This document shows, in pieces, positions 5,284 to 24,679 of a stretch of 64,000 nt of DNA. The stretch lies in IMG/VR virus record IMGVR_UViG_3300048591_000147, positions 186,001 to 250,000 of that record. One strand, written 5' to 3'. The notes beneath the pieces were generated by a model, which worked only from the letters and a program-made list of their open reading frames with translations, made no database searches and was not told the origin of the DNA. Position 1 is the first letter of the stretch. The number at the start of each line of letters is the position of its first letter. The position numbers were made by a program, and so were the translations under genes.

Positions 5284-8200
5284 TTATAGTTCCACTGCTG
5301 CTGGGCACACACCATCTACAAAGGTTGTAGTTCTTAGGACACCATTAGAAGGTGCTCTAACATTTTGGGTCGCTTGTAGCGCCACCCAAGAGGTTTTAAA
5401 GATGTCCGCATGTTCTCTTTTCAATGACATTGCCGCATGCAAAAATTCAAAGAATATCGCATTCACCTCATCTATCGTAAAATTGTTATAAATGTCATAC
5501 ATCATTAAAACTAATGATGCTTGATCTTCCATATTATAATTCTTAATGAATTCATTTATATCAACGTTTCTAAAATTGAACGTATTATTAACAAGTAATG
5601 AATTGATAATATATAATCCAAGATCCTTATCGATAAATGTCTGTTCTTCACCTAACCCAAATCGCGTGTCTGAGTTGTATAGTTGGTCATATATGAATCT
5701 ATTAATAGTAGGTATCACAACTTCTTGATTACCCTCTTCCGCGTCTGGATTCAAGTATACGACACCATTGACCACTCTCTTACCAATCAAAGACTCTGTT
5801 ATTCTATCCCACAAGAATGCGTCAATCTTGAATAATTGCTTCTCTCTGAATAGTTTCCACTCCCAATGCACATTTTTCAAATATAGTGGTGTGTATATTG
5901 AGTTTGGTCCCGGTAAATTATCACGTAGTGTGAAGTCACGCATAAATCTCAGAGAATATCTATCATCGTCTTTTACCGTGTTCTCTAAACCTTTCACAAC
6001 TAATTGGGTGTATCGATGTGGTAATTCGTATGCATCTTCATCAAACACTGTACCATAGATCAAACCATAACCAAATTCTGGCGTTCGTGGACCCTGTAAA
6101 ATCATATAAGGCGCAGGAATATTTCTTAACTGTTTAGCAGCCTCTTGCATATTCATATATGCGTCGCCAGTTATCGCGATCTTATTTGTTTTGTTTTTCA
6201 CCCAGAAATAGTACACGCTGAATTCTGCTCTAGAAACTGGGTCAATCTTGGTGGTAACTGAGTATGGGAACACCTTTTTATATTCTACACCAGCTTCTAA
6301 TTGCGCCATGGTTGGAGTCACAGCAACTTTTATCAAAGTTAGCATGTCTTGTGGTCTTGGTTTAGCTATTTGCCCGTCCAATTCAACACCATAACAGAAT
6401 TCACTTATGGTATCTGTATCTAGGTCCAGAGTGCCAGCGTACTTACCATTGATATAAGCGTCAACGACACCGTCAATTGCTGGGTTTGTCGGAACTGTAA
6501 ACTGCTGCACTAGCGCGACTATAAAGTCTTCTGTTACATCGACATGTTCTACCCATACTGGATCTTCGTCTGGGTCAGTCTCAGTATTCTTATATAGTTT
6601 ATAGTACGCTGAACCAGATCTTTTCTGATCCTGTAATAAATTGGTATTCTTGGCATCTTTCAGTACAGTCGCGTCCCATTCTGTTGGTGGCACCAATGAC
6701 TCTGTCCATTGATATAAATCTATGCTACCCCAATCGGCCATACTACCCCATTTTAGGATTCTTTCGTTTATATCTGTAAAGATTCTAGCATCATAGTATG
6801 GTATGTAAACCATTTTTGTTGTATCTGACCATACCGTAGATACTTTATCAGCGAGCCATGTAGTCTCAGTCTGAGATACATCCTCATAATTATACACCGC
6901 AACATCACTGTCATTTCTGATATCAATAATAGAATTGGCTACATGATAATGCTGTCCCAACGCTGGATGCCATAATTGGACTCTAGTCACAACGGTCCCC
7001 GCGCGCTTATCAATCAGCGTGGCAGGATTTTGCGCATCATAGTTATATGAAAGAATATAAACGGATAATCCATCTATAGTTCTTGGGTCTGCACCAGCAA
7101 TAGAGTTCATTTGTATCACTCTACCATTTATAAATGAATACTCATACCCTTCAGATAGCTGAACAGTTTCCTCTTTTACAGAATCCCAATATGATATGAT
7201 TACTTTGTCAGCGTGTACTGGTAGTCTCAATACTAATTTGTTATTGATAGACGCAATATCATTTTCAACATTATTCATTATGTTGATCACCTGACTGTCG
7301 AAATAGAATGAGGACTTAGGCTTCAGACTGAATAGCTGATCAGGTTGGTTCCACCATCTCGACAAATCGGTTAAACGCACTGGTTCGAACGTTTCATCTA
7401 ATACCGTATTGTCTGGAGTAACGAACTCAACACGCATTTCTTTTGTTGATACATCTCGCGTAAACAACTTCAATTCTGGATATATCTTCTCTTTATTATC
7501 ACCAAAACAACCAAGTCTATATGCCCAGAATTCATCCACATGTGCATCATCAAATACAGGCTGATTGACAAATGCTTTAATAGCATTATTTGTGCCCTTG
7601 TTCTGTATCATTCCTCTCCAGAACGCAAACTGTGTTTTGTCATTTATTTGTAGATCGTCCATATAATCTCTAGGACCATCATAACCGATAGACTTTCTAG
7701 CGCGTTCAATAATAGGTTTATTTTCTACTATCTTGTAAGTGTCATACAGATATCTGATATTCTCTACACTGTTTTCGATGTTATCAACCAATTTACCATC
7801 TTGTAGTACATAACCGCCAAGGTTTGGACGCAATGTGTACTTGTCTGATTTACTGAACTCGACATAGAATCTAGGAGTTCTAATCCCTAAGAAAGAATCG
7901 AAAATCATTGATCCATCTACTGAGATGTTATTGAATGTTAAGATATGTTCGTATGCATCTAGTAATAATTTGAAACCGGACATATTGACGATTTTCTGAT
8001 TTATCACCACACTGACTTGTTCAGTACCGTTGGTATTTTGTCTCTTAACATACTCAAAGTACTTTGCATTACTGTTTATAATATCTTTCAGCAATGAAAT
8101 CTTAGTTTCTTTATCTTGACGATACATCAATATGGAATCAATGTTTAATATATTTCCATTCTGATCATATATCTTAGGTGTTTCTGTAAAGTAGTAATCG

Positions 8201-11200
8201 GTTCTGTGGAATATATCACTGATTATGCCAAGGTCGTGGTGAACCCATACCATGTTCTTAACAGGGTTTATATCGTATGCTGGGTAATTAACAATATTGG
8301 TATATGACTGGATGTAGAACAATCCACTACCAGATGTCGTAATCGGAATCGCATTACCCTTTAATGCGTCATGCTTCGATACCGCTACCTGAAACTTAGT
8401 ATTAGTGGTGTTTCTAATTATATAATATGGTATATACTCTGATAGAGGATTATTAAATGGTTGTGGTAGCTCTGCATTACTATTCTTCAAGAATATGATC
8501 GGTGTGCCAGTAGCCCAACCAACAGTAGAATTGGATAGCTCCAAAGTATTATCCGATAAGTTAACAGAACATTGTAGTTTTAACTTGTTCTCTTGTTTGA
8601 TGGATTTTACTTGGTATGCCCAGTTTATGAATTTCTCAAGGTGCAACTGCCAATCGTTAGTTCTGCCAGTATCGGGATCGCTATTGTCCCCATCAGGATT
8701 CTTGAATTGAATTCCTTCATCATATAAGTATGACTCATATCCTTTAACGAAGTTGACAACACTCTGAATACCAGAAAGTTCTATTGGGAAGTTCTCAACG
8801 CGCACCGTGCGCTTATCATCTTCATAGACTCTCCATGGATATGTGGTGTTTGTACTTGCCAGTGCGTTGAAAGTTCTTTTTAATCTGCCGACAGAGTGAA
8901 TGCCATTGCCGACAGTCTGGATAGTTATAGCATTACCAAGACTTGCGGCACCAGCGTTTTTAGCTAACTTGAAAGAATAATCGTCTAGTCTGATTATGTA
9001 GTATGGAGTAAATAGATCTAACGGGGATGGTAACACACTACTAGAATCTAGGAAGATTTCTGTACCTGTTAACCATGTCGCTGGTAATGTTTTTGTGTCA
9101 TCAGAAATCAAATATCCATCCATGACACCGTCACTTATGCTGACGCTTTCATATACAAATATCTTGGTGGTCTGCGCTGTTATATCATACACACTATTTA
9201 ACACAATATAATCACCGTCATAGTTAGTACTATCTGCGATTTTAAATGTGCTTCTAGGTGAGAAAGTTCTCGTAACATTACCATACACTTCAAAAATTTT
9301 ATTAAATGTGTATGAAGACACTGAACTACTATGAATGACGAAGAAATCACTTACCGATGCGAACAAACCGGCATCGACAATACTAACGGCTGAAGCCCCA
9401 CCTATTGTGTTACTGATTATCTTCAGATTACCGTATTCTAGTATTGCTTCACCATATTCTGAAATTCTCTCATTGATCTCTGATAATAGAGCGCCCACAG
9501 TTTGAGCGTTGTAGCCCTTGATTATCAAATCCACAGTATTAATATTATCAAATTCTATACTAGCATAATAGGAGAAAGCAGTATTTGATAATTCGGTCTT
9601 CTTTGAATTAGTCAATGTCTGATTATAGTCAACTATCTGAAATCCTCTAGGCACAGTAATTGATGCTGTTTGTAATGGATATCTACCAACATCGCATATA
9701 TTGTTGAGCGTATCTACATAGAAGTCGAAGCACTCTGGGTCGTATAATGATATCGTTTTCACGGGTGTTAGTGAATCCAACTCTACTGTCCAGCCAATAC
9801 CATTATCTCTAGTCTTGCTATATTTGGATGGGACACTTAGTAATGTTGCCTGTAGCCCTACCATTGATTTGGAATCGAATGACTTCGTCTTGTTTATGGT
9901 TACATTAAAGTCTTTATCTGTTATGTCAAAGTTGTAGTTAAATACTGACAAATTATCAGTGTCTATCATACCACCGAACAAATAGGATAGCTTATGCTCC
10001 CATGTCTTCCAGATGGTTTTAAACGCTGACACTTCACCGTCAATGCTTGTGTATCTGATAAAGTATGCATACCATTGATTAATACCATTGGCCACATACA
10101 ATTGGTTATCAACTAGTTCACCGTGGAATGTTATTTCGCGATGGTTTCTAACTTTTTGTAATGTGCCGTCTATTTGTAGGCATGCAATAGTACAAAAGGT
10201 GGAATCAAATATCGCATTGAACACTTCAATTGGGTCTAATTTGAATGCTATGATTAGATCATCATAGTTTTTCCAAATACTTTTTTTCCACAACCATTCT
10301 ACCGTACCATGTTGCCCGAATTCGAAATCTAAATTAGGTGTCGTAACACCCTGATTCAAATTAATGTCAAAAAGCGTACGTATATTTGCATTTGTGGTGT
10401 TGGAGCTATTCCAATACGGTGGTAATAGATCATCTGGTGCATACCCATCATTAGTGTTCACAGAATCTATATTGACTGGTAGGAAATCAAATGTTGTATC
10501 TATCTGGCTGCTACCATTTGATGTATCGCCATTAGGTAGTAGATATCCACTTGGTACTATACCAGAAAGAATATTGGTCCACATGACAGAGTCCCAATAC
10601 CTATTGATCGACGCATTCGTGTTTACATATTCTGCATCCCACCACAACGGTTTATCGGTGTAACCCTGCAAAATCCAAGGTTGGTTGTTCGGATAAGCAG
10701 TTCCATACACATATTCGTATAATGCCTGCCAGCAACCAAATGTCGTATTGTCTTCAAGTCCGGTTACAGGGTGCTCTGGTATAGAAGTGTATGCGTAATT
10801 CCAAGTGAATGGGTCATTACTGTTAAACACTAAAGAATTCTTTAATGGATTAGTGATGTTATTAAGATTGATGAAATTATAGAACCGATCTTTTGCGAAT
10901 TCATCGTATCGGCCTAGTGTATTCACATCGTCAAAATTGTAACGATATTCATATGCTAGACAATCATTATATAACTTTAACTCGATATCTAGAATAAGAT
11001 TCGCCATTAATAGTTCTATATCAACTTTAAACCAAGTCAATGTCTCTGAAGACTTATAAATCTCTCTTGTTAGTGATTGCAAATCTGTTCTAACCAAAAT
11101 CTCACCAACATACGCAATATTGGGGAATGGTTCTGATGAAGCGTCCACTGTCTGGTACTGTGGGGATAGTTTCTTAATAATGGTTTCACGCTCTGCATTC

Positions 11201-14200
11201 AATAGACTAACTACTGAATGATGTCCGTCATGATGTACTATGACATAATTATCCAATTCATTTTTGAATTTATGTGGGTACGTCTTGTTGAAAATACCAA
11301 GACCAGCAGCACTGGTTATGAAGTTTTTAATTGATGTGTTTGTAGAGTCACCAAACCATTCAACATATTTGTCATTGTTTTCAAATTCGTCGATACAGTT
11401 TAACACGGTGTTATTGTTCAGGTCCGCTAATGTATTATTCGCAGATGATAAAATATCAATGTGTATTCTGTTCTTGAAAATTTCTTTAATATAGTTTATG
11501 GAAGAGTTGTAAGCGTTTGCTGCAAAATCCATAACATTTATCGGAGATCCACCATTAATAAACAACGCAGATACTAGGTTGTCTAACCCGCCGTTATGTT
11601 CTTTTATAGTACCACCAAGAATCTTATTAACATTGTCTAACAGATAATACTTACTGTTATTCTTTCCAAATAGCACGGACACTTCTTGAGCATCAATCAA
11701 ACTTGATACATGTCGCAATATCTCGCCACCACTAATCGTCTTTCTATTCTGATGTTCTATATTGTAGTACCAAGGATTTAATATATCCCATTGGTCTGAT
11801 ACTTTGACTGGAAGTGGTTTTTCCAAATTATTACCATGTTTCCAAACTGTTTCCAGTCTGTCTGTTAATAAATCATTATATGCATACAACGGTTGATCTT
11901 CGGACTGCAATAGGTTTTCAAATGTGAAGCCGCGCTTAATATAATCAAACACCATTCTTTTAAATGTGTATGGGCTAACTGGCATATCACTTGACTCAGC
12001 ATATTTGAATATTTCAGATGCTATGTCCGCTGGTGTTCCGTCACAATTGAAAATTTTAAATACTGGGTAAGAGTTTCTCGTAAATCTTTTCTGTTCTATC
12101 TTTCTAAGTCTTACTAGGTTGTACTTCTCATAGCCTGTCGGCGTATATATTAATACATCCCGTCTTCCGATATCTTCTAAGAAAGCTTCACCAACTTCTA
12201 TTCTAACAATATCATCTGTAGTCAATGTCACAGAATTATTAAACGTTATTCCTCCGACATAATCTGAGTTAATTAACGAACCATTATCAGTGAAATTGGC
12301 ATACTGGCGTACGCCATTGATATAGACTCTTATATCACCTTCTTGGTAATCGTCAAATAATACAATTTCTTGAAGACTCTCATGAAGTTCGATTGTTGCC
12401 CCAGACGTATTTGTTTTGATATTAAATTCTTGTGCAGTCAAGTATAAGTTTGAGTAGTAATCCCCCACACTGGAATATGATACAAAATCATTTACCATTG
12501 GATTTGGTGTCCAGTCATAACTAGACGCCACAATCTGTTTTACACCTTTAAATCTCCAATGATTCTCCGCATATCCCAACCAATCATCACCGAGACTTGT
12601 CTTGCTTGGACCTATTCTTGCGCCTATTGGTTTATCATTGATATCCGCTACATCATCCTTCAGATGTATCTTTGTCACGTAGCGTCCAGACGATGAATTC
12701 TTTACAAATTCGCAATAATCGATTGCATATACCCCATTATTTTCTGTAAAGTCCATGAACTTTAAACTAGAGCCCTCAATTGATGGTGTCAAATTACCAT
12801 ATTTTTCATTAAATACTACGGTGTAGTAATTCTCAAAATAGAATTCGTCGTCATCAGCAGTTAGCACTATATCATGCAACTCTAATAATTGTGGTTGCAC
12901 ATCTGTAGGTAAATACGAGTTATCACTAGTCTCTCTATAATCCCATTCATGTGATGCATATGAAGTATCAGATAATTCTACGAACGCATCAAATTCAATG
13001 ATAGGAATTTGCGCTCTTGATTTATCGGTGGTGTCACTTACCTGATCTTTATGTTCCCAGAAATTATTTGTATGCCAATCATCGTGTTGTGATATTTCGA
13101 TTAAGTGTTTGCCTCCAGTTAAACTTACGATATAACTAACGTTACGTACAACAACATTCCAAGAAGACCCGTCATACTGTAATAGTTCATCTTCCACACT
13201 GTCGTAGTATGTACTGTAAGGAGACGCTATTTGTGATTTGGTTAAAATGTTCTGTTTTCTGATTATCTTATAACTGATTGCAGAGTCACTCAAGAATCTG
13301 TTGTTAATGTTTAGGTTTAATTGTGTTCCGTATACTTCTAGTATTTCATAAATCCCAGTATACAGACCACTACTTATGATTACATAGTCGCCAGCGACAA
13401 CACCGCCCCCTATAAAATCTTGTAAACCATCGCTTAGTGTTTTTGTAGCTGCTAATACTTCCCCAGTACTAACAGTGTCTACTACCAATGCATTTTTAAA
13501 CCATATTTTTTCTAGATCTCTTAACGCCCATTCAGTATCAACGCTCACCGTAGTATTTCCAGTGGCGAAGAATTCTTTTTCTCCCTTCAACAGATATACT
13601 ATTGGAAGCAGATTTATGAACTGGCTTGGTGCTGTAAGGGTGCTTGGCAACCCTTCAACTGTGATGGTGGTTCTAAGACTCGCCGGATCGGAGTTAAATG
13701 CGCTTGATACACACTTCAATAAAATATCATTACTATCGAAGATACTAAACACATAACCCGGACAGAATAAATCAGTAACATTACCACTTACTGTTATAGT
13801 TGAGTCTACTAAATTGAAACCATTTATCACAACAGCCAATTTAGGATTACATACTCTTTTTATAATTCCAGTTAACGTTTCGGTAAATGTTAGCGTTGTT
13901 CTTCGAGAGCCACTATTGTAAAAGGTACTTGATATTTCTCGAACCACACCAGAACTCAATCCGTTAGTTATTTCGACATTCAATAAAATGTTATCACCAA
14001 CTGAGAATTGTGTAGTGAAATCACCGGCTATTTCAACGTATCCAATTGTATTGGGTAATGTTGACTCGTAGTGTGCATCATGTGATTGCACGACATTGAA
14101 TATGCTTTCCTGTGTCTGATTGAACCTAGAGGCAGAAAATTGGGAATAATTCTTTATCGTGATATAATCTACATCTATTTCCGGTCTTGTCCAGAAATAA

Positions 14201-14604
14201 TCTCTGTAGTTCATCAGCTTGTCTAAATTAATAGGAGGAACCCAATTAAATTCTAATAGCGCGCCCCATCTATCTAGACTTGGTATATCAACACCAATAG
14301 AATTCAACTTATCAACAAATTGTTCAAACGTCATGTATGAGTCTATGGAGCCAGTCTTCAAATGCGCAACTGGCTGCAATTGATTTACAGACCTGTATTC
14401 AGTAGGTTCATTTATTTTATATGACGCCACACTGGTAGTGTCTTCGTCGCCTATATTGCCGATATATCTAGTTAGTTCACTTTTAGACAGATATCTGTTA
14501 AACAGATTCTCGTTAATACTCTCCAATATCTTAGATTTATTAACGTTCGGTATTAGATTATTTAGATTAGTTCTTTTCTTAGAATAATCAGAGTTATTCG
14601 CCAT
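5284..14604 (-). CDS. Giant (~3100 aa) virion structural / baseplate protein (gp7-like position)
   Basis: Uninterrupted ORF after the gp6-like gene; ATG at 14604 with GAGG SD preferred over TTG 14622; motifs YRSVNQLQP, WVPPINLDKLMNYRDYFW, FWRGMIQNKGT, DEFWAYRLG. Confidence 0.8.
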   Translation of the reverse strand: MANNSDYSKKRTNLNNLIPNVNKSKILESINENLFNRYLSKSELTRYIGNIGDEDTTSVASYKINEPTEYRSVNQLQPVAHLKTGSIDSYMTFEQFVDKLNSIGVDIPSLDRWGALLEFNWVPPINLDKLMNYRDYFWTRPEIDVDYITIKNYSQFSASRFNQTQESIFNVVQSHDAHYESTLPNTIGYVEIAGDFTTQFSVGDNILLNVEITNGLSSGVVREISSTFYNSGSRRTTLTFTETLTGIIKRVCNPKLAVVINGFNLVDSTITVSGNVTDLFCPGYVFSIFDSNDILLKCVSSAFNSDPASLRTTITVEGLPSTLTAPSQFINLLPIVYLLKGEKEFFATGNTTVSVDTEWALRDLEKIWFKNALVVDTVSTGEVLAATKTLSDGLQDFIGGGVVAGDYVIISSGLYTGIYEILEVYGTQLNLNINNRFLSDSAISYKIIRKQNILTKSQIASPYSTYYDSVEDELLQYDGSSWNVVVRNVSYIVSLTGGKHLIEISQHDDWHTNNFWEHKDQVSDTTDKSRAQIPIIEFDAFVELSDTSYASHEWDYRETSDNSYLPTDVQPQLLELHDIVLTADDDEFYFENYYTVVFNEKYGNLTPSIEGSSLKFMDFTENNGVYAIDYCEFVKNSSSGRYVTKIHLKDDVADINDKPIGARIGPSKTSLGDDWLGYAENHWRFKGVKQIVASSYDWTPNPMVNDFVSYSSVGDYYSNLYLTAQEFNIKTNTSGATIELHESLQEIVLFDDYQEGDIRVYINGVRQYANFTDNGSLINSDYVGGITFNNSVTLTTDDIVRIEVGEAFLEDIGRRDVLIYTPTGYEKYNLVRLRKIEQKRFTRNSYPVFKIFNCDGTPADIASEIFKYAESSDMPVSPYTFKRMVFDYIKRGFTFENLLQSEDQPLYAYNDLLTDRLETVWKHGNNLEKPLPVKVSDQWDILNPWYYNIEHQNRKTISGGEILRHVSSLIDAQEVSVLFGKNNSKYYLLDNVNKILGGTIKEHNGGLDNLVSALFINGGSPINVMDFAANAYNSSINYIKEIFKNRIHIDILSSANNTLADLNNNTVLNCIDEFENNDKYVEWFGDSTNTSIKNFITSAAGLGIFNKTYPHKFKNELDNYVIVHHDGHHSVVSLLNAERETIIKKLSPQYQTVDASSEPFPNIAYVGEILVRTDLQSLTREIYKSSETLTWFKVDIELLMANLILDIELKLYNDCLAYEYRYNFDDVNTLGRYDEFAKDRFYNFINLNNITNPLKNSLVFNSNDPFTWNYAYTSIPEHPVTGLEDNTTFGCWQALYEYVYGTAYPNNQPWILQGYTDKPLWWDAEYVNTNASINRYWDSVMWTNILSGIVPSGYLLPNGDTSNGSSQIDTTFDFLPVNIDSVNTNDGYAPDDLLPPYWNSSNTTNANIRTLFDINLNQGVTTPNLDFEFGQHGTVEWLWKKSIWKNYDDLIIAFKLDPIEVFNAIFDSTFCTIACLQIDGTLQKVRNHREITFHGELVDNQLYVANGINQWYAYFIRYTSIDGEVSAFKTIWKTWEHKLSYLFGGMIDTDNLSVFNYNFDITDKDFNVTINKTKSFDSKSMVGLQATLLSVPSKYSKTRDNGIGWTVELDSLTPVKTISLYDPECFDFYVDTLNNICDVGRYPLQTASITVPRGFQIVDYNQTLTNSKKTELSNTAFSYYASIEFDNINTVDLIIKGYNAQTVGALLSEINERISEYGEAILEYGNLKIISNTIGGASAVSIVDAGLFASVSDFFVIHSSSVSSYTFNKIFEVYGNVTRTFSPRSTFKIADSTNYDGDYIVLNSVYDITAQTTKIFVYESVSISDGVMDGYLISDDTKTLPATWLTGTEIFLDSSSVLPSPLDLFTPYYIIRLDDYSFKLAKNAGAASLGNAITIQTVGNGIHSVGRLKRTFNALASTNTTYPWRVYEDDKRTVRVENFPIELSGIQSVVNFVKGYESYLYDEGIQFKNPDGDNSDPDTGRTNDWQLHLEKFINWAYQVKSIKQENKLKLQCSVNLSDNTLELSNSTVGWATGTPIIFLKNSNAELPQPFNNPLSEYIPYYIIRNTTNTKFQVAVSKHDALKGNAIPITTSGSGLFYIQSYTNIVNYPAYDINPVKNMVWVHHDLGIISDIFHRTDYYFTETPKIYDQNGNILNIDSILMYRQDKETKISLLKDIINSNAKYFEYVKRQNTNGTEQVSVVINQKIVNMSGFKLLLDAYEHILTFNNISVDGSMIFDSFLGIRTPRFYVEFSKSDKYTLRPNLGGYVLQDGKLVDNIENSVENIRYLYDTYKIVENKPIIERARKSIGYDGPRDYMDDLQINDKTQFAFWRGMIQNKGTNNAIKAFVNQPVFDDAHVDEFWAYRLGCFGDNKEKIYPELKLFTRDVSTKEMRVEFVTPDNTVLDETFEPVRLTDLSRWWNQPDQLFSLKPKSSFYFDSQVINIMNNVENDIASINNKLVLRLPVHADKVIISYWDSVKEETVQLSEGYEYSFINGRVIQMNSIAGADPRTIDGLSVYILSYNYDAQNPATLIDKRAGTVVTRVQLWHPALGQHYHVANSIIDIRNDSDVAVYNYEDVSQTETTWLADKVSTVWSDTTKMVYIPYYDARIFTDINERILKWGSMADWGSIDLYQWTESLVPPTEWDATVLKDAKNTNLLQDQKRSGSAYYKLYKNTETDPDEDPVWVEHVDVTEDFIVALVQQFTVPTNPAIDGVVDAYINGKYAGTLDLDTDTISEFCYGVELDGQIAKPRPQDMLTLIKVAVTPTMAQLEAGVEYKKVFPYSVTTKIDPVSRAEFSVYYFWVKNKTNKIAITGDAYMNMQEAAKQLRNIPAPYMILQGPRTPEFGYGLIYGTVFDEDAYELPHRYTQLVVKGLENTVKDDDRYSLRFMRDFTLRDNLPGPNSIYTPLYLKNVHWEWKLFREKQLFKIDAFLWDRITESLIGKRVVNGVVYLNPDAEEGNQEVVIPTINRFIYDQLYNSDTRFGLGEEQTFIDKDLGLYIINSLLVNNTFNFRNVDINEFIKNYNMEDQASLVLMMYDIYNNFTIDEVNAIFFEFLHAAMSLKREHADIFKTSWVALQATQNVRAPSNGVLRTTTFVDGVCPAAVEL

Positions 14605-14663
14605 AGTATCCTCAAATTTCAACTAAGATATTTATGCCGTTGTCCAAGCGTTAATTTAGGTCA

Positions 14664-22843: not shown

Positions 22844-23797
22844 ATGACTCCAGAACAATTCAAGGAAAGTATAAAAAGTGGAAGGCTTATTACAGATACT
22901 CCAGACGAAGTAACAAAAGAAGAGATAGTCGTACAACCAACAATTGACACCCCAATCCTAAAAACAGAAAAACCAAAATCAGACAAAATCAATCCGTTAC
23001 TAAAAAAAATACAGCGCATTCCCGGTGAAACATTCAAATTGCCTAGTCGAGGTATCTTTTATAAAAATGACGAACTAGATGAAGATGTGGTTGATGGTGA
23101 GGTTGTTATATTTCCAATGACTGGATATGATGAGTTATTGTTCAAATCACCGGATGCACTATTCCAAGGCACTGCGATAGAAAACGTTATTAGGCGCTGC
23201 GTACCAGCGATTAAGAACCCATTGGCATTATCTGCGAATGATATTGACTTTCTACTTACCTGTATAAGAAAAGTTACTTATGGTGAAAACATCACCATTA
23301 AGTTCAACTGTTATTCTGAAAAATGTAAAGAAAAGAATGTAGAGCGTGAATATGATGTATCTTTGTTGAAATTCATCTCACAAAGTAAACAGATCACACA
23401 GAATGAAATTGATAAACTTACATTCGTATTAGGCGACTTATATACTGTTAAGTTACGTCCAGCGAAGATGATCGACCTTATTGGAATATATCAGAATAGC
23501 ATTCCAGAATATGATGATAAGTTCGAAGCTCAATATACCAATCATGTGAAAGTATTGGTTTCTATTATAGAAAGTGTTGATGACGTTGATGATAAAGATA
23601 ACATTATTGAATGGATTAATGCGCTTCCGGCAAACATGGCTGATAATTTACTGAAGCAGATTCACAATTTAAACAGTTGGGGTGTGGAGTTCAAATATTC
23701 CATCACTTGTAAGGACTGTAAGAAGGCAATGGAAGTTACAACTCCAATGAACCCATTACATTTTTTTATGAAACCCTCCGACTTCGTGACCCCGTAA
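22844..23797 (+). CDS. gp26-like baseplate hub assembly protein / tail assembly chaperone
   Basis: KLPSRG.FY, PMTGYDE..FKSPDAL..G, DIDFLL..IR..TYG, two Cys pairs, C-terminal ..FF. Confidence 0.8.
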   Translation: MTPEQFKESIKSGRLITDTPDEVTKEEIVVQPTIDTPILKTEKPKSDKINPLLKKIQRIPGETFKLPSRGIFYKNDELDEDVVDGEVVIFPMTGYDELLFKSPDALFQGTAIENVIRRCVPAIKNPLALSANDIDFLLTCIRKVTYGENITIKFNCYSEKCKEKNVEREYDVSLLKFISQSKQITQNEIDKLTFVLGDLYTVKLRPAKMIDLIGIYQNSIPEYDDKFEAQYTNHVKVLVSIIESVDDVDDKDNIIEWINALPANMADNLLKQIHNLNSWGVEFKYSITCKDCKKAMEVTTPMNPLHFFMKPSDFVTP

Positions 23798-23808
23798 AAA
23801 CACAACAG

Positions 23809-24003
23809 ATGTTCAGGGATTTGGAGGGACAGGCGACAAGACTTATCGACAGTTTTGTTGAACTATCATTTTACATGCGTGGCAGTGTTCAATATGAAGA
23901 TTTCTTTAATATAACACCAGCCGAACGATCTAGAATGTTTGATTTTGTATCAAAACGGCTGGAGCCAGAAATGAAGAAACATATGCAAGTGTGTGTATAC
24001 TAA
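23809..24003 (+). CDS. gp51-like baseplate assembly protein (possibly made as a -1 frameshift fusion)
   Basis: LSFYMRGSVQYED..N.TP.ER motif; no visible SD; its frame is open back to a T7 run at 23761. Confidence 0.7.
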   Translation: MFRDLEGQATRLIDSFVELSFYMRGSVQYEDFFNITPAERSRMFDFVSKRLEPEMKKHMQVCVY

Positions 24004-24004
24004 A

Positions 24005-24679
24005 ATGACTACTATAACCATAGATCCATCCATATCATGCACTGCCATGGTAATAGACGACAAAAAATTTATATTTACTAATAAATCATACGCATCCACC
24101 AAAACAGGACTGAATAAATGGTTTACAAAGTGTAGTGATTACATACATTATGAGATTCTGGATGACCTTCCGAAGTGTGATGACTATTCCGTATCAGAAA
24201 TTGAAAAGATAAAGCGATATAAATCTATCGCTACATCTATTCTGGGGACCATCACCAAAAATATAAAGTCAAGCCATACTTTGAAAATATATATTGAGGG
24301 TTACAGCTATTCTTCTATAGCTGGCCCCATTATAGACTTGGTTACCCTTGGCACATTGATCCGGGATAAATGCATTAGTATTGCAGATGAAGTCATTATA
24401 GTATCGCCAAAAACTTTAAAGATTGAAACCTGTAAGTTCGCATATGCGCCGATACAAGTTAAAAAGAAGACAGAATATCGAAATAATAGTGGAGTATCGG
24501 GTGGTAAATTTACCAAAACTGAAATGTGTCAGTCACTTCTTGATAGTAAACTAGATTGTGAATGGGTGACCTTTCTCAGAGATAATAAAGAAGAGATTCT
24601 TAAAAACAAGTCAATTCCAAAACCAATAGAAGATATTAATGATGCTAAATTAATGTTTGAGATCTTTAAAGATAAATAA
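24005..24679 (+). CDS. RuvC-like / RNase H-fold nuclease (candidate Holliday junction resolvase)
   Basis: ITIDPS...TA, IEGYSY, VSPKTLK, TK.EM, DINDA acidic tetrad; ATG 24005 preferred. Confidence 0.7.
   Translation: MTTITIDPSISCTAMVIDDKKFIFTNKSYASTKTGLNKWFTKCSDYIHYEILDDLPKCDDYSVSEIEKIKRYKSIATSILGTITKNIKSSHTLKIYIEGYSYSSIAGPIIDLVTLGTLIRDKCISIADEVIIVSPKTLKIETCKFAYAPIQVKKKTEYRNNSGVSGGKFTKTEMCQSLLDSKLDCEWVTFLRDNKEEILKNKSIPKPIEDINDAKLMFEIFKDK

What the first reader, a model, noticed from the sequence alone, without database searches (positions are those of the whole stretch)
23755..24003. Candidate programmed -1 frameshift fusing the gp26-like and gp51-like genes
Seen: near its end the gp26-like frame reads CAT TTT TTT ATG, a T-TTT-TTT slippery heptamer (23761-23767) in the correct X XXY YYZ phase. 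The -1 frame is open from there (FFYETLRLRDPVKTQQ) into the ATG of the 64-aa ORF at 23809, which has no SD. Known: lambda-type tail assembly chaperones G/GT are made this way, whereas T4 gp26 and gp51 are annotated as separate genes. Inference: this phage makes a short and a long product, suggesting the gp26/gp51 pair are G/GT-equivalent chaperones.
Basis: partly seen in the sequence, partly recalled or inferred. Interest (0 to 1): 0.7.

Follow-up and report, generated by a model that had tools for sequence, protein, structure and literature searches.

The report
Frameshifted tail chaperone gene, jumbo phage
A jumbo phage's gp26-like baseplate-hub gene carries a conserved slippery T-run that most likely lets ribosomes slip back one base to make a short and a long tail-assembly chaperone from one gene; T4 makes the same pair from two genes (26 and 51), and this arrangement was already described for T4-like phages in 2022.

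Summary
T7 lies at 23761-23767 in X XXY YYZ phase near the end of a 317-aa PF12322 (T4 gp26/gp51 family) ORF. The -1 frame is open from there to 24003.

- An in-phase T TTT TTY heptamer with a 57-82-aa open -1 extension is present in about 136 related loci: jumbo phages, cyanomyoviruses, Pootjesviridae and some Straboviridae. The one exception has C CCT TTA instead.
- The codon before Phe-Phe always ends in T, whatever the amino acid.
- PA5oct has no start codon anywhere in its extension.
- Genomes with the slip site have one PF12322 gene. T4 has two (26 and 51) and no slip site.
- T4 gp51 is a gp26-like domain plus a C-terminal tail, and that tail is homologous to the -1 extension.
- An AlphaFold model gives the three known tail-assembly-chaperone structures as its only PDB matches with Z of 5 or more.

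Correction: the 64-aa ORF matches only the tail of gp51, and T4 genes 26 and 51 are divergent, not tandem.

Two open papers cite Vladimirov, Gautam and Davidson (Virology 2022) for this same concept in T4-like phages. The window is therefore a new, unannotated member of a known kind. No protein-level evidence exists.

The parts
22844..23797 (+). Zero-frame ORF, 317 aa: the short product (TAC-N, gp26-like). Residues about 51-155 and 185-284 are modelled as two tandem tail-assembly-chaperone-like domains. Conserved Cys pairs lie at C156/C161 and C289/C292.
   Evidence: ORF. PF12322 T4_baseplate, E 1.8e-16, 60.9 bits against a cut-off of 24.5, aa 105-308 matching profile positions 38-218 of 219; phrog_150 baseplate hub. 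AF2 model with pLDDT 80.6, top PDB matches 3klu, 2ob9 and 3fgx; conserved Cys.
23761..23767 (+). Slippery heptamer T TTT TTT in X XXY YYZ phase. The zero-frame codons TTT TTT encode F307 and F308.
   Evidence: Conserved as T TTT TTY in relatives. Codon test.
23767..24003 (+). The -1 frame extension: 78 codons plus the TAA stop. Joined to residues 1-308 it gives the predicted 386-aa long product (TAC-NC, gp51-like). It is modelled as helical, with helices at extension residues 9-36 and 51-71.
   Evidence: lengths. (conservation). (homology to the gp51 tail). (model, pLDDT 75.8).
23767..23797 (+). Overlap zone, read in both frames. The zero frame gives MKPSDFVTP then stop. The -1 frame gives YETLRLRDPV...
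   Evidence: In relatives the zero-frame tail varies from 1 to 21 codons, while the -1 frame is conserved from the slip site onward.
23809..24003 (+). It is the distal part of the -1 extension and is probably not an independent gene.
   Evidence: No Pfam or PHROG hit. Homologues follow gp26-like genes in Xoo-sp13, XacN1, RsoM2USA and Atu_ph07. Start-codon survey.
23774..23781 (+). 5' arm (CCCUCCGA) of a predicted stem that starts 6 nt after the heptamer. It is a candidate frameshift stimulator with weak support.
   Evidence: MFE -18.5 kcal/mol, z -1.6. Both arms are invariant in five close relatives, but there is no covariation to test.
23821..23828 (+). 3' arm (UUGGAGGG) of the same predicted stem.

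Best explanation
This is a programmed -1 ribosomal frameshift in the tail-assembly-chaperone (TAC) gene of a 315-kb T4-related jumbo phage.

Most ribosomes read the gp26-like ORF to its stop at 23797 and make a 317-aa protein (TAC-N). A minority slip back one base. This happens when tRNA-Phe occupies both the P site (UUU, 23762-64) and the A site (UUU, 23765-67), so that both re-pair on 23761-66. Those ribosomes continue with UAU at 23767 and read 78 further codons. The result is a 386-aa protein (TAC-NC) with the same first 308 residues plus a helical C-terminal domain. The '64-aa ORF' is the distal part of that domain.

T4 itself makes the same two forms from two paralogous genes, 26 (short) and 51 (long).

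Shown here: the signal, its phase, its conservation and synonymous constraint, the homology of the extension to the gp51 tail, the gene-copy pattern, and the TAC-like fold.

Inferred by analogy with lambda G/GT and from the T4 literature: the short form coats the tape-measure protein, the extra domain of the long form recruits tube or hub components, neither form stays in the virion, and the long form is the minor product.
For: (1) Signal and phase.

(2) Conservation. 18 of 18 GenBank jumbo-phage loci carry it, including a 595-kb uncultured phage. So do 30 of 31 IMG/VR loci, 5 of 5 close relatives, S-WAM1, OLIVR5 and LPCS28, and 79 of 79 evaluable cyanophage-like loci. In each the in-phase T TTT TTY lies 6-66 nt before the zero-frame stop and the -1 extension is 57-82 aa where it is complete. 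The single exception, L029, has lost the T-run but has an in-phase C CCT TTA four codons upstream with a 79-aa extension.

(3) Synonymous constraint in 23 representatives at 70% aa identity or less. The preceding codon is always NNT although it encodes ten different amino acids. The first Phe codon is always TTT. The joint probability under each ORF's own codon usage is about 1e-17, without phylogenetic correction.

(4) Independent initiation cannot explain the family. PA5oct has no ATG, GTG or TTG in its 73-codon extension. The first start codon is at codon 48 in RsoM2USA and at codon 31 in RaK2. The -1 frame residues are conserved from the slip site onward.

(5) Gene copies. One PF12322 gene is found in the window's complete genome and in RaK2, PA5oct, Atu_ph07, XacN1, S-WAM1, OLIVR5 and LPCS28. 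T4 has two. T4 and six other gp26 loci with the T4-type layout (five with an annotated divergent gene upstream, four of these called gp51; gene 25 downstream) have Glu (GAA/GAG) before Phe-Phe and no canonical heptamer.

(6) Homology. T4 gp51 aa 1-201 match PF12322. The extension profile against the gp51-tail profile gives E 4e-5 and score 26.8, while 60 column shuffles gave 10.2 +/- 2.2 with a maximum of 18. The full trans-frame alignment against the gp51 alignment is collinear to gp51's C-terminus (E 3.7e-6, 215 columns). The cyanophage extension against the gp51 tail gives E 8e-7.

(7) Fold. In a Foldseek-independent search of 48,161 PDB chains, the only three matches with Z of 5 or more are 3klu, 2ob9 and 3fgx (Z 6.9, 6.1, 5.5). 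They fall on two separate halves of the model. PMC9603447 describes all three as phage tail assembly chaperones.

(8) Literature. Leiman et al. 2010 list gp26 and gp51 as hub assembly chaperones and say gp51 is absent from the particle. Vladimirov et al. 2022, as cited, identified the T4-like TAC genes.
Against: - There is no protein or RNA evidence for the long product in any of these phages.
- Phe-Phe is conserved at the protein level even in T-even gp26, which does not frameshift, so part of the T-run conservation is protein-driven.
- No stimulatory RNA structure is conserved across the family. Mean z is -1.5, only 8 of 23 representatives fall below -2, and the RaK2 group has none.
- From my own knowledge, U UUU UUY is not among the most efficient heptamers in E. 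coli.
- In this window the gene is not flanked by tube and tape-measure genes as classical TAC genes are.
- The fold Z-scores are below 8, the range the tool calls middling.
- The N-domain profile alignments are noisy, with off-register hits at similar scores.
Confidence: 0.86

Rival explanations
1. Transcriptional slippage. RNA polymerase stutters on the T-run and adds one U to a fraction of transcripts, which then encode the same fusion in a single frame.
For: The window and its nearest relatives have T7 to T9 runs. A T8 transcript would give exactly the same 386-aa product. Nothing in the DNA sequence alone separates the two mechanisms.
Against: 16 of 23 representatives and 79 of 79 cyanophage-like loci have only six T followed by C. 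From general knowledge of bacterial RNA polymerase slippage, that is shorter than the runs that slip efficiently. The run is phase-locked as X XXY YYZ in every lineage. L029 replaces it with a non-homopolymeric heptamer, C CCT TTA.
Confidence: 0.08
2. Two ordinary genes. The 64-aa ORF is translated from its own ATG at 23809, and the T-run is only a by-product of a conserved Phe-Phe motif.
For: An ATG exists at 23809. Most GenBank records annotate a small separate ORF here. Phe-Phe is also conserved in T-even gp26. Weak SD use in this genome means that the lack of an SD is not evidence against initiation.
Against: PA5oct has no start codon in its extension, and start codons are late in RsoM2USA, RaK2 and L036. 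The -1 frame residues upstream of any start codon are conserved. The preceding codon is always NNT and the first Phe codon always TTT. Two-gene phages use a non-slippery coding of the same motif. The trans-frame product aligns collinearly with the contiguous gp51 protein.
Confidence: 0.04
3. Homopolymer assembly error. The true genome has T8 and a single 386-aa gene.
For: Homopolymers are error-prone on some sequencing platforms.
Against: Seven independent contigs keep T7. The same frame relation is seen in about 136 loci from isolates and metagenomes, most of them with a T6C heptamer.
Confidence: 0.01

Closest known systems
TAC-N/TAC-NC genes of T4-like phages (Vladimirov, Gautam & Davidson, Virology 2022, 566:9-15). 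Known to me only through its title and its citations in PMC10885494 and PMC12846349.
   Same: The protein family is the same (gp26/gp51, PF12322). There is a short and a long form. [quoted passage not shown] T4-type phages instead carry a short gene plus a long fused gene.
   Different: The paper is not held in the library, so I could not check whether it covers the RaK2 / XacN1 / PA5oct / Atu_ph07-type jumbo phages or the tandem two-domain fold. In the window the protein is longer (317 aa against 208 in T4), with an N-terminal extension and inserts.
Lambda gpG/gpGT and the conserved tail-chaperone frameshift (Levin et al. 1993; Xu, Hendrix & Duda 2004; cited from my own knowledge).
   Same: [quoted passage not shown] The fold is TAC-like (HK97 gp10, 2ob9).
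   Different: The heptamer differs (T TTT TTY against G GGA AAG). The N-terminal part appears to be two TAC-fold domains with Cys pairs rather than one. In this window the gene is not between the tube and tape-measure genes. There is no sequence similarity to gpG.
T4 gp26 and gp51 (hub assembly chaperones; Leiman et al. 2010, PMC3004832).
   Same: The zero-frame product corresponds to gp26 and the trans-frame product to gp51. The shared motif is ...FF then (x)xLL..P[DE]E[IV]...Y...M.P.ER...
   Different: T4 encodes them as two divergent paralogous genes without a slip site (GAG TTC TTT GAG). T4 gp51's tail is about 48 aa against 78 aa here.

Membership tests
PF12322 T4_baseplate (gp26/gp51 family) | Match to the Pfam HMM above the gathering score | tested here: met
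   60.9 bits against a cut-off of 24.5, E 1.8e-16. One search gives the same locus in the whole genome at 61.6 bits.
Frameshifted tail assembly chaperone pair (lambda G/GT type) | [quoted passage not shown] | tested here: met
   T TTT TTT at 23761-23767, 30 nt before the end of the zero-frame stop.
Frameshifted tail assembly chaperone pair (lambda G/GT type) | Heptamer and open -1 frame conserved in diverged relatives | tested here: met
   about 136 loci. One locus has an alternative heptamer. Codon-level constraint.
Frameshifted tail assembly chaperone pair (lambda G/GT type) | TAC fold of the shared N-terminal part | tested here: met
   the only PDB matches with Z of 5 or more are the TAC structures 3klu, 2ob9 and 3fgx (Z 6.9, 6.1, 5.5). 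The next is 4.4 and rank 50 is 2.7. Caveat: Z is below 8, and the match rests on a predicted model (pLDDT 80.6).
Frameshifted tail assembly chaperone pair (lambda G/GT type) | Gene lies between the tail tube gene and the tape-measure gene | tested here: not met
   The neighbours are divergent baseplate genes upstream (226 aa, gp53-like, 600 aa, gp5-like, gp25-like, gp6-like) and a RuvC-like gene downstream. In LPCS28 and OLIVR5 the gene does follow tube or tube-initiator genes.
Frameshifted tail assembly chaperone pair (lambda G/GT type) | Both products made, with the long form in the minority. Both needed for tail assembly and absent from virions. | not testable with these tools
   This needs proteomics and genetics. 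For T4, Leiman et al. 2010 report that gp51 is required but absent from the particle.
Frameshifted tail assembly chaperone pair (lambda G/GT type) | Short form binds the tape-measure protein and the C-domain of the long form binds the tube protein | not tested
   Complex prediction was not used. The tube and tape-measure genes of this phage were not identified in the window.
T4 gp51 (long form) | PF12322 domain followed by the gp51-type C-terminal tail | tested here: met
   The extension against the gp51 tail gives E 4e-5 (shuffles reach at most 18 against 26.8). The full trans-frame alignment is collinear to gp51's end (E 3.7e-6). The newer Pfam model PF28602, which is listed on gp51 homologues, is not in the local library, so that HMM could not be run.

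The most novel reading that the evidence does not exclude
The -1 frameshift may be the ancestral and nearly universal way in which the whole T4-related supergroup makes its two chaperone forms. That supergroup runs from cyanomyoviruses to jumbo and 595-kb 'mega' phages. On this reading the T-even two-gene state (26 + 51) arose later by duplication and loss of the slip site. The chaperone would also be an unusual tandem of two TAC-fold domains with Cys pairs. If the 2022 paper did not cover the jumbo clades or the tandem fold, these points are new. They would also give an annotation rule for hundreds of genomes in which the long form is missing.
Probability: 0.35. Interest if true: 0.5.

Novelty: new member of a known kind. 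Interest (0 to 1): 0.35.

Why it matters
The finding confirms a recoding event that current annotation misses. None of the 20 GenBank records inspected here that carry the slip site (17 jumbo phages plus S-WAM1, OLIVR5 and LPCS28) annotates a frameshift. Five of them (RsoM2USA, RaK2, PA5oct, S-WAM1, LPCS28) do not annotate the downstream frame at all. One record labels the gene a metal-transporting ATPase.

It extends the gp26/gp51 tail-chaperone frameshift to jumbo phages. It also supplies a natural experiment, one gene with a slip site against two genes without one, that supports the view of T4 gp26 and gp51 as the short and long chaperone forms.

The practical value is better phage annotation, and targets for re-searching existing virion and infected-cell proteomes.

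Tried and rejected
- The search for related loci with the broad alignments A1 and A4 failed because no block was conserved enough. With the window protein alone it found nothing. Narrower alignments worked.
- A megablast of the locus against phage records found nothing.
- An HMM built from T-even gp51 sequences was too narrow to score the jumbo proteins usefully.
- hhalign of the zero-frame alignment, or of a control fusion with the extension reversed, gave off-register matches at scores of 40-42. The N-domain score alone is therefore not evidence. I relied on the extension-only comparison with shuffle controls.
- Foldseek E-values against the PDB were all non-significant, and AlphaFold DB/Swiss-Prot gave only Hsp33 noise.
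- PF28602 is not in the local Pfam copy.
- The big-database search with the extension found only three near-identical 64-aa ORFs with no Pfam label.
- The Virology 2022 paper is not held.
- I rejected the 'no SD' argument as uninformative in this genome.
- A family-wide stimulatory RNA structure was sought and not found.

Full report
**What is in the sequence**

Window 23761-23767 is a run of seven T. It lies in the ORF 22844..23797 (317 aa), and the zero-frame codons are CA|T TTT TTT ATG. The run is therefore a T TTT TTT heptamer in X XXY YYZ phase, covering F307 and F308.

After a -1 slip the next codon is TAT at 23767. That frame is open for 78 codons to the TAA at 24001-24003. It passes through the ATG at 23809 that heads the 64-aa ORF. 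The predicted products are a 317-aa short form and a 386-aa long form made of 308 + 78 residues.

The T7 length is real.
- A contig from run X1 spans 23564-23826 without a difference.
- A variant contig from run X5 spans 23602-23801 with six substitutions and no gap.
- Five contigs of 84-95% identical relatives, from five other samples, have the same CATTTTTTTATG.

T7/A7 runs are depleted about threefold in the window: 12 against 36 +/- 9 in shuffles. The window is part of a complete 314,956-bp virus record with terminal repeats.

**What the genes are**

The 317-aa protein matches Pfam PF12322 T4_baseplate (E 1.8e-16, 60.9 bits). The match ends at residue 308, which is the slip site. It also matches PHROG 150, baseplate hub. 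The 64-aa ORF has no family hit.

The upstream neighbours on the other strand are baseplate genes. Downstream come a RuvC-like gene, a helicase, SbcCD, a late sigma factor and the portal gene.

**Conservation**

tblastn with the 64-aa ORF finds syntenic homologues behind gp26-like genes in the jumbo phages Xoo-sp13, XacN1, RsoM2USA and Atu_ph07. I fetched 18 GenBank jumbo-phage loci and 31 IMG/VR loci.
- Every GenBank locus has an in-phase T TTT TTY 6-66 nt before the zero-frame stop and a -1 extension of 70-82 aa. This includes a 595-kb uncultured phage.
- Thirty of the 31 IMG/VR loci do too.
- The exception, L029, has lost the T-run (CTC TTT TCC). It carries an in-phase C CCT TTA four codons upstream, with a 79-aa open -1 frame.

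The feature is not confined to jumbo phages.
- Synechococcus phage S-WAM1 (Kyanoviridae), Agrobacterium phage OLIVR5 (Pootjesviridae) and Cronobacter phage LPCS28 (Straboviridae) have it.
- So do 79 of 79 evaluable cyanophage-like contigs. In all of them T TTT TTC lies exactly one codon before the stop, and the extensions are 62-68 aa.

**Is this more than a conserved Phe-Phe?**

I compared 23 representatives that share 70% protein identity or less.
- The codon before Phe-Phe always ends in T, although it encodes Ser, His, Ala, Asn, Thr, Val, Asp, Tyr, Arg or Gly.
- The first Phe codon is always TTT.
- The second is TTC (16 cases) or TTT (7 cases).
- Under each ORF's own codon usage the joint probability is about 1e-17. 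This has no phylogenetic correction, so it is an upper bound on significance.

The -1 frame amino acids are conserved from the slip site onward, upstream of any start codon. Examples are R.KLL.S.PEEI in the RaK2 group and R[IV]AL[LM]H in cyanophages.

Start codons do not support a separate gene. PA5oct has no ATG, GTG or TTG anywhere in its 73-codon extension. The first start codon is at codon 48 in RsoM2USA and at codon 31 in RaK2. The zero-frame tail after Phe-Phe varies from 1 to 21 codons.

**Relation to T4**

In T4, gene 26 is followed by gene 25, and gene 51 is transcribed divergently. The picture of a 'gp51 gene behind gp26' is therefore not the T4 arrangement.

However, T4 gp51 residues 1-201 match the same Pfam family as gp26 (E 3.9e-52 and 8.8e-64). 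gp51 carries a further 48-aa tail. T4 gp26 ends ...EFFELL, encoded as GAG TTC TTT GAG, which is not slippery.

The -1 extension is homologous to the gp51 tail.
- The extension profile against the gp51-tail profile gives E 4e-5 to 7e-5 and score 26.8. Sixty column shuffles gave 10.2 +/- 2.2, with a maximum of 18.
- The cyanophage extension against the gp51 tail gives E 8e-7. By BLASTP against T4 gp51 residues 207-244 it gives E 3e-5.
- An alignment of full trans-frame products, built in a script, aligns collinearly with gp51 across the junction to gp51's C-terminus (E 3.7e-6, 215 columns).

The gene counts fit this picture.
- One PF12322 gene is found in the window's genome and in RaK2, PA5oct, Atu_ph07, XacN1, S-WAM1, OLIVR5 and LPCS28.
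- T4 has two.
- Five further Straboviridae have the T4-type layout, with a divergent upstream gene that four of the five records annotate as gp51 and with gene 25 downstream. Together with one IMG/VR relative they have Glu (GAA/GAG) before Phe-Phe and no canonical heptamer.

**Fold**

An AlphaFold2 model of the 317-aa protein has mean pLDDT 80.6 and pTM 0.74. Foldseek found no significant hit. Its first hit was nevertheless the HK97 tail assembly chaperone 2ob9, and its eleventh was YqbN 3klu.

A Foldseek-independent VIA-align search of 48,161 chains gave three matches with Z of 5 or more:
- 3klu, Z 6.9, on model residues 185-279;
- 2ob9, Z 6.1, on residues 61-147;
- 3fgx, Z 5.5, on residues 51-155.

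The next match is at Z 4.4 and rank 50 is at 2.7. PMC9603447 describes these three entries as phage tail assembly chaperones. The protein therefore looks like two tandem TAC-fold domains. That would also explain the off-register profile hits seen. The Z-scores are in the tool's 'middling' range, so this is supportive rather than conclusive.

The extension alone is modelled as helical, with mean pLDDT 75.8.

**Mechanism**

The phase-locked X XXY YYZ heptamer, the prevalence of T6C over long homopolymers, and the replacement heptamer in L029 all favour tandem tRNA-Phe slippage on the ribosome over transcriptional slippage. Slippage by the polymerase cannot be excluded for the T7-T9 lineages, which include this window.

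In many lineages the zero-frame stop lies one or two codons after the slip site.

A stem often begins 6-8 nt downstream. In the window it pairs 23774-23781 with 23821-23828, and both arms are invariant in five close relatives. This stem is not conserved across the family: mean z is -1.5, and the RaK2 group has none.

The efficiency of the shift and the ratio of the two products are unknown.

**Function**

By homology to T4 gp26/gp51, the two products are hub or tail assembly chaperones. Leiman et al. 2010 (PMC3004832) report that gp51 is required but absent from the particle. The roles of the two forms are inferred by analogy with lambda G/GT, supported by the TAC-like fold. They have not been shown.

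**Prior knowledge**

My searches on gp26, gp51 and frameshift found no open paper that reports this directly.

Two open papers, however, cite Vladimirov, Gautam & Davidson (Virology 2022, 566:9-15).
- The PRFect paper says that some T4-like phages carry a short TAC gene and a longer fused gene instead of frameshifting.
- The phage Adele paper refers to poly-T slippery sequences in 'TAC-N genes of T4-like phages'.

The 2022 paper itself is not held. The concept is therefore published. The window adds a member from the jumbo-phage branch. I cannot tell whether the clade-wide survey and the tandem-fold observation made here go beyond that paper.

**Verdict**

The mechanism is a programmed -1 ribosomal frameshift, with confidence of about 0.86. 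The novelty class is a new member of a known kind, and the interest is moderate to low.

Noticed in passing
window 23002-23008 (+): A second in-phase slippery heptamer, A AAA AAA (Leu-Lys-Lys, residues 53-55), lies in the same gp26-like ORF inside an A8 run. By my reading, the -1 frame closes after six codons. It is probably incidental, because the Lys-Lys is not conserved in relatives.
   Followed up: partly
L029:2340-2360 (IMGVR_UViG_3300002055_000003): This is the only relative without the T-run (Leu-Phe encoded as CTC TTT). It has an in-phase C CCT TTA four codons upstream and a 79-aa open -1 frame. That could be a relocated slip site or a metagenome assembly error.
   Followed up: partly
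L013 (Yersinia phage fHe-Yen9-04, NC_042116) 1878-2753: The gp26-like gene is annotated in RefSeq as 'Lead, cadmium, zinc and mercury transporting ATPase'. This is evidently a misannotation, probably triggered by the Cys pairs.
   Followed up: no
L003 (RsoM2USA), L006 (PA5oct), L012 (RaK2), L063 (S-WAM1), L065 (LPCS28): In these GenBank records the -1 extension is not annotated at all and appears as an 'intergenic' gap of 160-360 nt. In OLIVR5 (L064) a 46-aa ATG-started piece of it is annotated 'baseplate hub assembly catalyst'.
   Followed up: yes
window 22844-23797, model mb293760391da: The protein looks internally duplicated. Two TAC-like domains (about residues 51-155 and 185-284) are each followed by a conserved Cys pair (C156/C161 and C289/C292). 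Profile alignments also hit off-register, with the C-half of the jumbo protein on the N-half of gp51.
   Followed up: partly
fold search, rank 4: ORF19 of the Vibrio cholerae PICI-like element (5ir0) is the next-best structural match (Z 4.4, model residues 189-284). This hints that this satellite protein may have a TAC-like fold.
   Followed up: no
window, several gene starts: Many genes of this phage (helicase 26496, late sigma factor 31991, RuvC-like 24005) have no recognisable Shine-Dalgarno motif. SD presence or absence is a poor guide to gene starts in this genome.
   Followed up: partly
window 5284-14622 (-): A very large ORF of 3112 aa lies downstream of the gp6-like baseplate wedge gene in the same transcription direction. 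It was not examined.
   Followed up: no
window 24001-24007: The stop of the -1 extension (TAA, 24001-24003) lies inside the listed GTG-started RuvC-like ORF (23993..24679) and just before its ATG at 24005. The chaperone and the resolvase-like gene are therefore tightly packed.
   Followed up: no
whole window: T7/A7 homopolymers are about threefold rarer than in dinucleotide-preserving shuffles (12 against 36 +/- 9).
   Followed up: yes
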